Shown piece after piece: positions 5,140 to 5,360 of a stretch of 64,000 bases of DNA (within the stretch, counting starts at the first letter, position 1; the number at the start of each line of letters is the position of its first letter). The notes below the pieces were generated by a model, which saw only the letters and a list, made by a program, of their open reading frames with translations, was not told where the DNA came from and made no database searches. The DNA is taken from the sequence record OR670491.1; one strand, given 5' to 3'. Made by a program: the position numbers and the translations under genes.

Positions 5140-5360
5140 TGTATTCAGTACTGAATCACCAGGGGAGGTTGTAATTCCCGATTCAGTAGCTTTTTAAGCG
5201 GTTTCGTGTGTGCCTACACATTACAACTAGTGCACATTTAAAACCTAGACGTAGGGTGTAAGTATTCAGTACTGAATAGCTGAAGGACTTATTATGGTAC
5301 AATACAGTGCGAGGTACTCCGGTATGCTCAGTTCACCTTTAGCTAAAATGGTCACTGTAG
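5140..5360 (+). ncRNA. candidate pseudoknotted RNA
   Basis: ORF-free; stems TACTGAATC/GATTCAGTA and TAGCTGAAGG/CCTTTAGCTA, each with a loop segment complementary to downstream sequence. Confidence 0.4.

What the first reader, a model, noticed from the sequence alone, without database searches (positions are those of the whole stretch)
5140..5360. Candidate RNA with two tandem pseudoknot-like modules
Seen: module 1 has a 9-bp stem TACTGAATC/GATTCAGTA enclosing GGGAG-GTTGTAA-TTCCC, whose loop is complementary to ATTACAAC near 5220. Module 2 has a 10-bp stem 5277-5286/5336-5345 whose interior TACAGTG (5303-5309) pairs with CACTGTA (5353-5359) outside the stem. The 16-bp AGTACT palindrome separates the modules. 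No ORF. Established: small self-cleaving ribozymes occur near phage tRNA genes. Inference: a new ribozyme or structured ncRNA.
Basis: partly seen in the sequence, partly recalled or inferred. Interest (0 to 1): 0.65.

Follow-up and report, generated by a model that had tools for sequence, protein, structure and literature searches.

The report
Conserved folded RNA in jumbo phages
The flagged stretch is a real, previously undescribed structured non-coding RNA that giant RaK2-like phages of enterobacteria keep beside their tRNA genes.

Summary
The window is Escherichia phage vB_EcoM_JNE01, a 355-kb Asteriusvirus. On their own they are not beyond chance: shuffles give a 9-bp stem in 12% of cases, a 10-bp stem in 19% and a 7-bp stem in 90%.

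Comparative evidence supports a structured RNA. Window 5126-5405 is about 95% identical across 19 Asteriusvirus phages, more conserved than the flanking ORFs. The one annotated ORF, 5294-5458, is frameshifted in relatives.

A 155-nt core (5138-5292) recurs in Alcyoneusvirus (RaK2), the Munch group, CBB and Erwinia phage Hallingskeid. A covariance model built only from those distant members finds this locus as its sole hit in the JNE01 genome (E 2e-4). Compensatory changes support:
- hairpins A to E;
- a new long-range pseudoknot between the 5' leader and the loop of hairpin E.

No Rfam family matches. The best guess is a stable trans-acting RNA of the tRNA region, like T4 RNAC/RNAD. Ribozyme activity is untested.

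The parts
5126..5141 (+). Start of the conserved block (TAAATGTAGACGGATG). It holds the conserved single-stranded 5' segment (A/G)CGG(W)(Y)GTA shared by all lineages. An A/T-rich ATAAAT-like stretch lies just upstream.
   Evidence: Conservation begins here in 19 Asteriusvirus sequences, although the upstream genes differ.
5142..5148 (+). Leader L (UAUUCAG), the 5' strand of the long-range pseudoknot PK2. It pairs with the loop of hairpin E at 5272-5278.
   Evidence: The 7 bp are perfect in 11 sequences of 5 lineages. Two pairs changed on both sides (UAUUCAG/CUGAAUA versus UAACCAG/CUGGUUA). PK2 was not part of the model that made the alignment.
5149..5188 (+). Hairpin A. Outer stem P1 is 5149-5157/5180-5188, inner stem 5162-5166/5175-5179, and the loop contains GUUGUAA (5168-5174).
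   Evidence: P1 is kept with compensatory changes: UACUGG/CCAGUA in Munch, UACUAG/CUAGUA in CBB, GGCAG/CUGCU in Hallingskeid. One pair is A-A in 6 of 19 Asteriusvirus sequences.
5189..5199 (+). Hairpin B (GCUU-loop-AAGC).
   Evidence: The stem is kept while the loop varies in sequence and length. Longer versions occur in CBB and Hallingskeid.
5208..5237 (+). Hairpin C. Outer stem is 5208-5213/5232-5237, inner stem 5214-5216/5228-5230. The loop contains UUACAAC (5221-5227), which kisses the loop of hairpin A.
   Evidence: The kissing pair has four versions: GUUGUAA x UUACAAC (JNE01), GUUGCG x CGCAAC (RaK2), GUGAU x AUCAC (Munch), AUGA x UCAU (Hallingskeid). The C stems also covary: GCCAGC/GUUGGC versus GCGUGC/GUACGC, and CGAAUAGG/CCUAUUCG versus CAGUUAAG/CUUAAUUG.
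5244..5255 (+). Hairpin D (CCUA-GACG-UAGG). It is present in Asteriusvirus and Alcyoneusvirus only.
   Evidence: CCUA/UAGG becomes CCCA/UGGG in phiKp21 and UCCA/UGGA in RaK2. All cells are paired (100%) and 2 pairs are compensatory.
5258..5292 (+). Hairpin E. Outer stem is 5258-5263/5287-5292, inner stem 5265-5270/5279-5284, loop 5271-5278. The loop pairs with leader L.
   Evidence: UUCAGU/GCUGAA becomes UUCUGU/GCAGAA in RaK2. JP4 changes U-G to U-A. GUAAG/CUUAC becomes AUAAG/CUUAU in CBB.
5303..5359 (+). Asteriusvirus-only extension.
   Evidence: Hairpin G shows A-U to G-C in 4 sequences and G-U to A-U. Helix F changes only from U-A to U-G. Indels of +1/-1 occur here, so the region is not coding.
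5360..5394 (+). Terminator-like hairpin T (5360-5381) followed, after 8 nt, by a U-run (5390-5394).
   Evidence: One pair occurs as G-C (14 sequences), A-U (2), G-U (1) and A-C (2). Another changes from U-G to C-G. The consensus terminator scan did not call it, so the terminator function is inferred.
5277..5345 (+). It is present in the sequence but mutually exclusive with hairpin E.
   Evidence: It is invariant in 18 of 19 sequences. Its only variable position (JP4, G to A) breaks it. There is no covariation, and a stem this good appears in 19% of shuffles.
5397..5425 (+). Sigma-70-type promoter TTGACA-17-TATTAT, immediately after the element. It drives the small ORFs and the two tRNA-Thr genes (5660-5813).
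   Evidence: It matches 11 of 12 consensus positions and is conserved in relatives.
4106..4134 (+). Upstream early-type promoter (TTGACT-17-TATAAT with CAGTACTG in the spacer). Its transcript would run through ORFs 4383-5128 into the element.
   Evidence: That this promoter makes the RNA is an inference.

Best explanation
Window 5138-5394 (+ strand) encodes a structured non-coding RNA.

Its conserved core (5138-5292, about 155 nt) folds into five hairpins, A to E. Two tertiary pairings lock them together. The loop of hairpin A kisses the loop of hairpin C. The 5' leader pairs with the loop of hairpin E, which closes the domain. This core is shared by RaK2-like jumbo phages of Escherichia, Salmonella, Klebsiella, Pectobacterium and Erwinia. 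In most of these lineages it lies next to phage tRNA genes.

In Asteriusvirus the core carries a 100-nt extension: helix F, a UNCG-type hairpin and a terminator-like hairpin with a U-run.

Inferred mechanism:
- The RNA is made on the + strand, either by read-through from the early promoter at 4106 or from an unmapped promoter of its own.
- It ends at the terminator. In phages where a tRNA follows directly, it would instead be released by tRNA processing.
- It then accumulates as a stable, compact RNA that acts in trans through its tertiary fold, as a binding partner or decoy for a protein.

This parallels the small stable RNAs RNAC and RNAD of the T4 tRNA region. Conservation, strand, fold and distribution are shown. 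Transcript ends, stability and target are inferred.
For: 1. Conservation. Mean column identity over 5125-5400 is 95% in 19 Asteriusvirus phages, while the neighbouring ORFs diverge or are replaced.

2. Not coding. The only ORF is frameshifted in 9 of 11 phages, and annotations disagree between records.

3. Covariation.
- On A4 (22 sequences, 2 genera), 96.5% of cells pair against 31-44% in slid controls. Eleven pairs changed on both sides; no shuffle of 500 reached that.
- On A8 (4 distant sequences), 93% of cells pair and 10 pairs are compensatory.
- On A10 (11 sequences, 5 lineages), the leader x E-loop pseudoknot is 100% paired with 2 compensatory pairs.

4. Homology. Model R2 was built only from Munch, fENko-Kae01, CBB and Hallingskeid. 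It finds window 5131-5296 as its single hit in the 355-kb JNE01 genome (E 2.3e-4) and finds the RaK2 element (E 0.018). Model R1 shows one copy per genome.

5. Strand. Many G-U pairs occur, and the fold z-score is -2.73 on the + strand against -1.31 on the - strand.

6. RNA-level rather than DNA-level pairing. In Hallingskeid and Munch the palindromes are lost, but the leader/E-loop complementarity is kept.

7. Context. tRNA-Gly lies 14-60 nt downstream in Munch, fENko-Kae01, Hallingskeid and a metagenome contig. In JNE01 the two tRNA-Thr genes lie downstream, starting at 5660.

8. Expression hint. In two RNA libraries, the contig covering 5120-5406 has about 5 times the depth of neighbouring phage contigs.
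Against: - No direct evidence of a discrete, stable transcript. The read data are assembled contigs without ends or strand, and DNA carry-over cannot be excluded.
- No promoter of the RNA's own was identified.
- The terminator-like hairpin was not called by the consensus scan.
- The independent lineages are few (about five), so the compensatory events are few and phylogenetically clustered.
- Nothing identifies a target or partner. Flanking protein genes are not conserved between genera.
- The trans-acting role rests on analogy with T4 RNAC/RNAD, whose own roles are unknown (PMC3014915, PMC9697503).
- RaK2 has no tRNA within about 700 nt downstream, although a partial tRNA match starts about 610 nt after the element at the end of that locus.
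- The AGTACT motifs in the gene could add a DNA-level role.
Confidence: 0.6

Rival explanations
1. The core is a self-cleaving or otherwise catalytic RNA that helps to cut the tRNA-region transcript.
For: It has a compact 155-nt fold with two tertiary pairings. It has invariant unpaired segments: GCGGUUGUA, UUUCACGAGGC and AAAAC. It lies close to tRNA genes. There is precedent for ribozymes beside phage tRNAs (PMC10879173).
Against: No match to any Rfam ribozyme family, even at E up to 10. The topology does not resemble the nested double pseudoknot of HDV-like ribozymes. It lies 5' of the tRNA, where RNase P already cuts. In JNE01 a promoter separates it from the tRNAs. No cleavage-site evidence exists.
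Confidence: 0.12
2. It is a cis-acting element of the upstream operon. It could be a 3'-UTR stability or processing structure, or an attenuator or riboswitch-like sensor, that decides whether transcription reads on into the small ORFs and tRNA genes.
For: It sits at the 3' end of a transcription unit that starts at the promoter at 4106. In Asteriusvirus it ends in a covarying hairpin plus U-run. Mutually exclusive pairings exist: hairpin E against the 10-bp stem, and helix F against an extension of hairpin T.
Against: The upstream genes are unrelated between genera, while the RNA is conserved. A strong promoter follows the terminator, so read-through control seems unnecessary. The terminator and the alternative pairings are absent from the Munch, CBB and Hallingskeid versions, and the 10-bp stem has no covariation. 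No riboswitch family matches.
Confidence: 0.15
3. The region acts mainly as DNA. The three AGTACT palindromes, about 120 bp apart, would bind the unknown factor that reads this genome-wide motif and would control the neighbouring promoter or replication. RNA folding would be incidental.
For: CAGTACTG is 58-fold over-represented and sits in the spacer of early sigma-70-type promoters. Perfect 14-bp palindromes occur at 5143 and 5264. Earlier scan notes reached the same view of the motif.
Against: DNA sites would not explain near-invariance of the 100-nt stretches between them, compensatory changes in eight helices, or G-U pairs on one strand only. The centre of the palindrome at 5264 is mutated in 6 of 19 phages. 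In Hallingskeid and Munch the palindromes are gone but the RNA pairings remain.
Confidence: 0.08
4. ORF 5294-5458 (annotated hypothetical protein, 54 aa) is a real gene, and the conservation is due to coding.
For: It is annotated in OR670491 and PQ471516. A GAAGGA motif lies 5 nt before the ATG.
Against: It is frameshifted to 15-17 aa in nine other phages. The conserved block starts 170 nt upstream of the ATG, and the indels fall in a hairpin loop.
Confidence: 0.01

Closest known systems
Bacteriophage T4 RNAC (species 1) and RNAD (species 2), the small stable RNAs of the tRNA gene cluster
   Same: These are non-coding RNAs of 119-139 nt encoded next to phage tRNA genes in a large lytic phage of E. 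coli. They are transcribed with the tRNA region, and their roles are unknown (PMC3014915, PMC9697503). RaK2-like phages are distant relatives of T4 (PMC5259590).
   Different: There is no sequence match: blastn with the element finds only RaK2-like phages. T4 RNAC carries a tRNA-like T arm, GGUUCGAAUCC; the present RNA has none, and ARAGORN finds no tRNA in it. The kissing-loop plus leader/loop pseudoknot architecture is not known for the T4 RNAs. Whether this RNA is stable is untested.
Theta ribozymes (minimal HDV-like ribozymes beside tRNAs of gut phages; PMC10879173)
   Same: They are small structured RNAs with pseudoknots, encoded next to phage tRNA genes.
   Different: Theta ribozymes are postulated to process tRNA 3' trailers, and so sit 3' of the tRNA. 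They are small and HDV-like. This RNA is 155 nt, lies 5' of the tRNA, has a different topology and matches no HDV-type model in Rfam.
Large or complex-folded bacterial and phage ncRNAs of unknown function found by comparative genomics (for example GOLLD, ROOL, raiA; named from my own knowledge)
   Same: They are recognised only through covariation. They have multi-helix folds with pseudoknots, are often found in phages or near tRNA genes, and have no known function.
   Different: This RNA is much shorter than GOLLD or ROOL. It has no Rfam match to any of them. It is restricted to one clade of jumbo phages.
YrlA / bacterial Y RNA-like RNAs (RF02553)
   Same: They belong to a neighbourhood of tRNA-like and stable RNAs. 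In CBB, a permuted T-arm/D-arm module with a sub-threshold YrlA match lies 40 nt upstream of the element.
   Different: The element itself does not match YrlA. The five phage genomes searched, one from each lineage, have no Ro/TROVE gene. Sub-threshold YrlA hits also ring in 11 of 14 control genomes because of tRNA likeness.

Membership tests
Any Rfam 15 family (riboswitches, ribozymes, sRNAs) | Covariance-model score at or near the family's gathering threshold | tested here: not met
   Within 5126-5400 there is no hit at gathering thresholds or at E up to 10. The RaK2, Munch, CBB and Hallingskeid versions have none at E up to 1.
tRNA / tmRNA | Cloverleaf with T and D arms, detectable by ARAGORN or RF00005 | tested here: not met
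   ARAGORN and Rfam find tRNAs only at 1165-1432 and 5660-5813, and none in 5126-5400.
T4 RNAC/RNAD-type stable RNAs | Encoded within or beside the phage tRNA gene cluster | tested here: met
   The tRNA-Thr pair lies downstream in JNE01, starting at 5660. tRNA-Gly lies 14-60 nt downstream in Munch, fENko-Kae01 and Hallingskeid. tRNA-Ile and tRNA-like fragments lie upstream in CBB.
T4 RNAC/RNAD-type stable RNAs | Sequence or structural homology to T4 RNAC/RNAD (for example the tRNA-like T arm of RNAC) | tested here: not met
   T4 is not among the blastn hits. No GGUUCGAAUCC-type arm is present.
T4 RNAC/RNAD-type stable RNAs | Accumulates as a discrete stable RNA in infected cells | not testable with these tools
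   Only assembled contigs from RNA libraries were available. They show about 5-fold higher depth over 5120-5406 but give no ends and no strand.
HDV-like / theta ribozymes | Nested double pseudoknot (P1, P1.1, P2, P3, P4), cleavage at the 5' end, position 3' of a tRNA | tested here: not met
   There is no Rfam HDV-type match. The topology found is five hairpins plus a kissing loop and a leader/loop pairing. The element lies 5' of the tRNAs. Cleavage was not testable.
Intrinsic (Rho-independent) terminator (for 5360-5394) | G+C-rich hairpin immediately followed by a U-run | tested here: inconclusive
   A covarying 9-bp hairpin and a UUUUU run are present, but 8 nt separate them and the stem is A+U-rich. 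The consensus scan reports no terminator.
Type III toxin-antitoxin antitoxin RNA (ToxI-like tandem pseudoknot repeats) | Tandem near-identical repeats of about 36 nt followed by a toxin endoribonuclease gene | tested here: not met
   The two 'modules' share only the roughly 30-nt motif region. The genes that follow are a 35-aa ORF and tRNAs.
Y RNA / YrlA with Ro (Rsr) | Match to the YrlA model, and a TROVE-domain Ro protein gene in the genome | tested here: not met
   There is no YrlA match on the element. There is no TROVE hit in JNE01, CBB, Munch, RaK2 or Hallingskeid.

The most novel reading that the evidence does not exclude
The 155-nt core is a new class of catalytic or ligand/protein-sensing RNA specific to the tRNA regions of RaK2-like jumbo phages. 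One example would be a new self-cleaving ribozyme that processes the tRNA-region transcript. Another would be a high-affinity decoy for a host RNA-processing or defence protein. Its double tertiary lock (kissing loops plus leader/loop pseudoknot) would form the active site or binding pocket.
Probability: 0.15. Interest if true: 0.85.

Novelty: new variant of a known kind. Interest (0 to 1): 0.62.

Why it matters
Complex-folded RNAs with several covariation-supported tertiary contacts are rare. They have usually turned out to be ribozymes, riboswitches or cores of RNA-protein machines.

This one is conserved across at least five lineages of 350-kb phages that infect E. coli, Salmonella, Klebsiella, Pectobacterium and Erwinia. 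It is single-copy and sits in the tRNA region. The analogous stable RNAs of T4 still have no known role.

The RNA is small enough for probing, structure determination and mutate-and-rescue genetics in culturable phage-host pairs. That makes the old question of what phage 'stable RNAs' do directly testable.

The work also corrects a spurious protein annotation. It shows that the genome-wide AGTACT tag has been built into an RNA fold in some lineages and lost from it in others.

Tried and rejected
- Rfam at gathering and permissive thresholds on the window and on four distant homologues found nothing but tRNAs.
- Pattern scans of IMG/VR used four patterns. Only 121Q, RaK2 and CBB are real. Loci L017-L020, L047-L058 except L052 (the CBB record), and almost all of L059-L137 are chance matches at about the expected rate.
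- The metagenome scan gave only a Hallingskeid-like contig.
- R1 and R2 hits in Serratia phage BF (L036, L037) and Cronobacter phage GAP32 (L168) look like coding sequence with AGTACT motifs or an antisense ORF start. I rejected them as homologues. There is no hit in Yersinia phage fHe-Yen9-04.
- Y RNA idea: the YrlA-like match next to the CBB element is sub-threshold, the model rings in most control genomes, and no Ro/TROVE gene exists.
- Conserved protein partner: the upstream small proteins of PBECO4, RaK2, phiKp21 and JNE01 are unrelated.
- A motif 1 x motif 2 full duplex (the single-sequence MFE) and a motif 2 x motif 3 helix were rejected. The A-to-T change at the centre of motif 2 and the T-to-C change in motif 3 break them, while the alternative helices are kept.
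- A T4-type late promoter (TATAAATA) is not established. ATAAAT-like strings precede the RNA in most lineages but not in 121Q, and the exact octamer is rare in the window.
- A literature search for the motif and for ncRNAs of RaK2-like phages found nothing relevant.
- The raw-read RNA run X21 held no reads for this stretch.
- My first count of the kissing helix on A8 used a wrong register. It was corrected.

Full report
**Identity of the window.** The region 4800-5900 is 100% identical to Escherichia phage vB_EcoM_JNE01 (OR670491, 355,583 bp, genus Asteriusvirus). Window position equals record position minus 248,000. The interval lies between a small-ORF operon and two tRNA-Thr genes at 5660-5813. 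That operon comprises ORFs 4383-4829 and 4826-5128 and is preceded by a strong sigma-70-type promoter at 4106-4134. A second strong promoter (TTGACA-17-TATTAT, 5397-5425) follows the interval directly.

**Checking the observation.** A dinucleotide-shuffle test of 5125-5400 shows that such pairings are common in sequence of this composition:
- a Watson-Crick run of at least 7 bp in 90% of shuffles;
- at least 8 bp in 49%;
- at least 9 bp in 12%;
- at least 10 bp with one G-U in 19%.

The whole-region fold energy is moderately unusual on the + strand (z = -2.73; 2 of 200 shuffles fold as well) and not on the - strand (z = -1.31). 'No ORF' needs a correction. GenBank annotates 5294-5458 as a 54-aa hypothetical protein. 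That frame survives only in JNE01 and Turkey5, and is cut to 15-17 aa by +1/-1 indels in nine other phages. Annotators of sister genomes placed different ORFs on both strands, or none.

**The palindrome.** The 16-bp palindrome is one instance of a genome-wide motif. CAGTACTG occurs 53 times in the 64-kb window against 0.9 expected. It is the second most frequent 8-mer, after the overlapping AGTACTGA. It occurs in all reading frames and in the spacer of early-type promoters, as TTGAC(T/A)-N8-9-TTCAGTACTG(A)-TATAAT. Two earlier notes of this scan describe the same hyper-abundant AGTACT tag elsewhere in this genome. I re-derived it independently for this window. The palindrome is therefore not a hallmark of this RNA.

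**Conservation.** Blastn finds the 276-nt block in 37 Asteriusvirus records at 91-100% identity, and more weakly in Klebsiella Alcyoneusvirus phages. In alignments of 11 and 19 Asteriusvirus sequences the block 5126-5405 is almost invariant (95% mean identity). The upstream genes are replaced and the downstream small ORFs diverge. The few variable sites fall in loops or change in a pair-preserving way.

**Structure within Asteriusvirus.** RNAalifold and explicit pair counts give 99% paired cells against 31-47% for slid controls. The changes are:
- hairpin G (5311-5329, UCCG/UUCG loop) switches A-U to G-C in four phages;
- the terminator-like hairpin T (5360-5381) shows G-C, A-U, G-U and A-C at one pair and U-G to C-G at another;
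- hairpin B keeps its stem while its loop changes in length.

The only variable base in its 10-bp stem (JP4, G to A) breaks that stem but converts U-G to U-A in a competing hairpin E.

**Structure across genera.** The RaK2, phiKp_21 and OU509535 versions keep the first 155 nt. On the 22-sequence alignment, 96.5% of cells pair. Eleven pairs changed on both sides, against 0-4 in slid controls and none of 500 shuffles reaching that number. The decisive cases are:
- A-loop x C-loop: GUUGUAA x UUACAAC becomes GUUGCG x CGCAAC;
- hairpin D: CCUA/UAGG becomes CCCA/UGGG or UCCA/UGGA;
- hairpin E: UUCAGU/GCUGAA becomes UUCUGU/GCAGAA.

**More distant members and proof of homology.**
- A covariance model of the core (R1) finds one copy per genome in JNE01, 121Q and RaK2. 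It also gives a weak top hit in Salmonella phage Munch, directly 5' of tRNA-Gly.
- Blastn from the Munch hit recovers Klebsiella phage fENko-Kae01, Pectobacterium phage CBB and Erwinia phage Hallingskeid.
- A second model (R2) was built only from these four. It returns window 5131-5296 as its single hit in the whole JNE01 genome (E 2.3e-4) and returns the RaK2 element (E 0.018). This reciprocal result establishes one family.
- Within the distant group, 93% of cells pair and 10 pairs are compensatory.
- Hairpin C changes almost completely: CGAAUAGG/CCUAUUCG versus CAGUUAAG/CUUAAUUG, and outer stem GCCAGC/GUUGGC versus GCGUGC/GUACGC.
- P1 changes: UACUGG/CCAGUA, UACUAG/CUAGUA and GGCAG/CUGCU.
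- The kissing pair appears in two further versions: GUGAU x AUCAC and AUGA x UCAU.

**A new long-range pseudoknot.** The 7 nt just 5' of P1 (5142-5148, UAUUCAG) are complementary to the loop of hairpin E (5272-5278, CUGAAUA). In Munch and CBB the two sites read UAACCAG and CUGGUUA. I aligned 11 sequences from 5 lineages with a model that does not contain this pairing. In that alignment all 7 pairs are intact in every sequence, and two pairs changed on both sides.

In JNE01 these two segments are the left half of the first palindrome and the right half of the second. That could suggest a DNA explanation. But in Hallingskeid the first palindrome is destroyed (UAUUCAGGGCAG), and in Munch the second one is (GUCAUUUACUGGUUA), yet the complementarity persists. 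The constraint is therefore on RNA pairing.

**What lies 3' of the core.**
- In Asteriusvirus, helix F, hairpin G and hairpin T plus a U-run follow the core, and then the promoter at 5397.
- In RaK2, a remnant resembling the C-terminus of a homing endonuclease sits between two copies of hairpin E.
- In Munch, fENko-Kae01, Hallingskeid and a metagenome contig, tRNA-Gly follows within 14-60 nt.
- In CBB, tRNA-Ile and a permuted tRNA-like module lie upstream.

**Expression.** No raw-read run held the phage. In two transcriptomic libraries that contain a BF17/Turkey3-like Asteriusvirus, the contig spanning 5120-5406 has depth 36 and 20. Neighbouring phage contigs have depths of about 3-7. Uneven depth argues for RNA rather than contaminating DNA. 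Contigs give neither ends nor strand, so this is only a hint.

**Comparison with known families.**
- No Rfam family matches the element in any lineage, and ARAGORN sees no tRNA in it.
- T4 RNAC and RNAD are the closest known by context. [quoted passage not shown] They share no sequence with this RNA, and RNAC has a tRNA-like T arm that this RNA lacks.
- Theta ribozymes are postulated to process tRNA 3' trailers (PMC10879173). This RNA lies 5' of its tRNA neighbours and has a different topology.
- A Y-RNA role is unlikely, because no Ro/TROVE gene exists in the five genomes searched.

**Verdict.**
- It is a single-copy, covariation-supported, doubly locked 155-nt fold.
- It is conserved across at least five lineages of RaK2-like jumbo phages.
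- It is not in Rfam, and I found no mention of it in the searched literature.
- Its function is unknown.

I rank the readings as follows:
- a stable trans-acting RNA of the tRNA region, about 0.6 (this includes uncertainty about its target);
- a cis-acting stability or attenuation element, 0.15;
- a ribozyme, 0.12;
- a purely DNA-level site, 0.08.

The 10-bp stem of 'module 2' should be dropped from the model unless probing shows it to be an alternative conformer.

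Noticed in passing
whole window; e.g. 586, 1140, 4120, 32462, 34861, 61722: CAGTACTG occurs 53 times against 0.9 expected and is the second most frequent 8-mer. It appears in all reading frames of ORFs. It also sits in the spacer of sigma-70-type promoters, as TTGAC(T/A)-N8-9-TTCAGTACTG(A)-TATAAT.
   Followed up: partly
window 62880-63012: Three perfect ATTCAGTACTGAAT palindromes sit inside direct repeats 53-66 bp apart, in a non-coding stretch near the end of the window. This may be a cluster of sites for the factor that reads the motif.
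   Followed up: no
window 5586-5652: A conserved hairpin (GUAAGAU...AUCUUAC, with an inner CUC-AUAC/GUAU-GAG stem) ends 8 nt before tRNA-Thr. Its changes in relatives are compatible with pairing. It may be a structured tRNA leader or another small RNA.
   Followed up: partly
window 5469-5576: A 35-aa ORF (MKVSKETAKQLEEL...) with a ribosome-binding site is conserved in all Asteriusvirus sequences compared and is annotated in several of them, but not in the JNE01 record.
   Followed up: partly
window 5294-5458: The annotated hypothetical protein WOL22929.1 is almost certainly not a gene. Its frame is broken in nine related phages, and it overlaps the structured RNA and the promoter at 5397.
   Followed up: yes
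L012:870-1035 (Klebsiella phage RaK2, JQ513383 about 175866-176031): A fragment whose translation resembles the C-terminal DNA-binding end of a homing endonuclease (...YICGGYYW...) is inserted between two copies of hairpin E. This looks like an old homing event into the RNA gene.
   Followed up: partly
L172:1001-1091 (Pectobacterium phage CBB, KU574722 about 304600-304690): A T arm is followed, after 38 nt, by a D arm. This is a permuted tRNA-like module with a sub-threshold YrlA match (31 bits; gathering score 69). It lies 40 nt 5' of the CBB copy of the RNA. No Ro/TROVE gene is present in the phage.
   Followed up: partly
L012:1110-1200 (RaK2): A second candidate structured RNA follows a TATAAT box (GCGAGGGACGCUACGCC...CCUUGAGAGUCCCAAGG + U-run) and ends in a clean terminator hairpin. 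It was not examined further.
   Followed up: no
window 3515-4084: An HNH homing endonuclease gene (annotated in OR670491) lies between the tRNA-Ser/Met cluster (1165-1432) and the operon that precedes the RNA. The tRNA region is a hotspot for mobile endonucleases here, as it is in T4 (segB).
   Followed up: no
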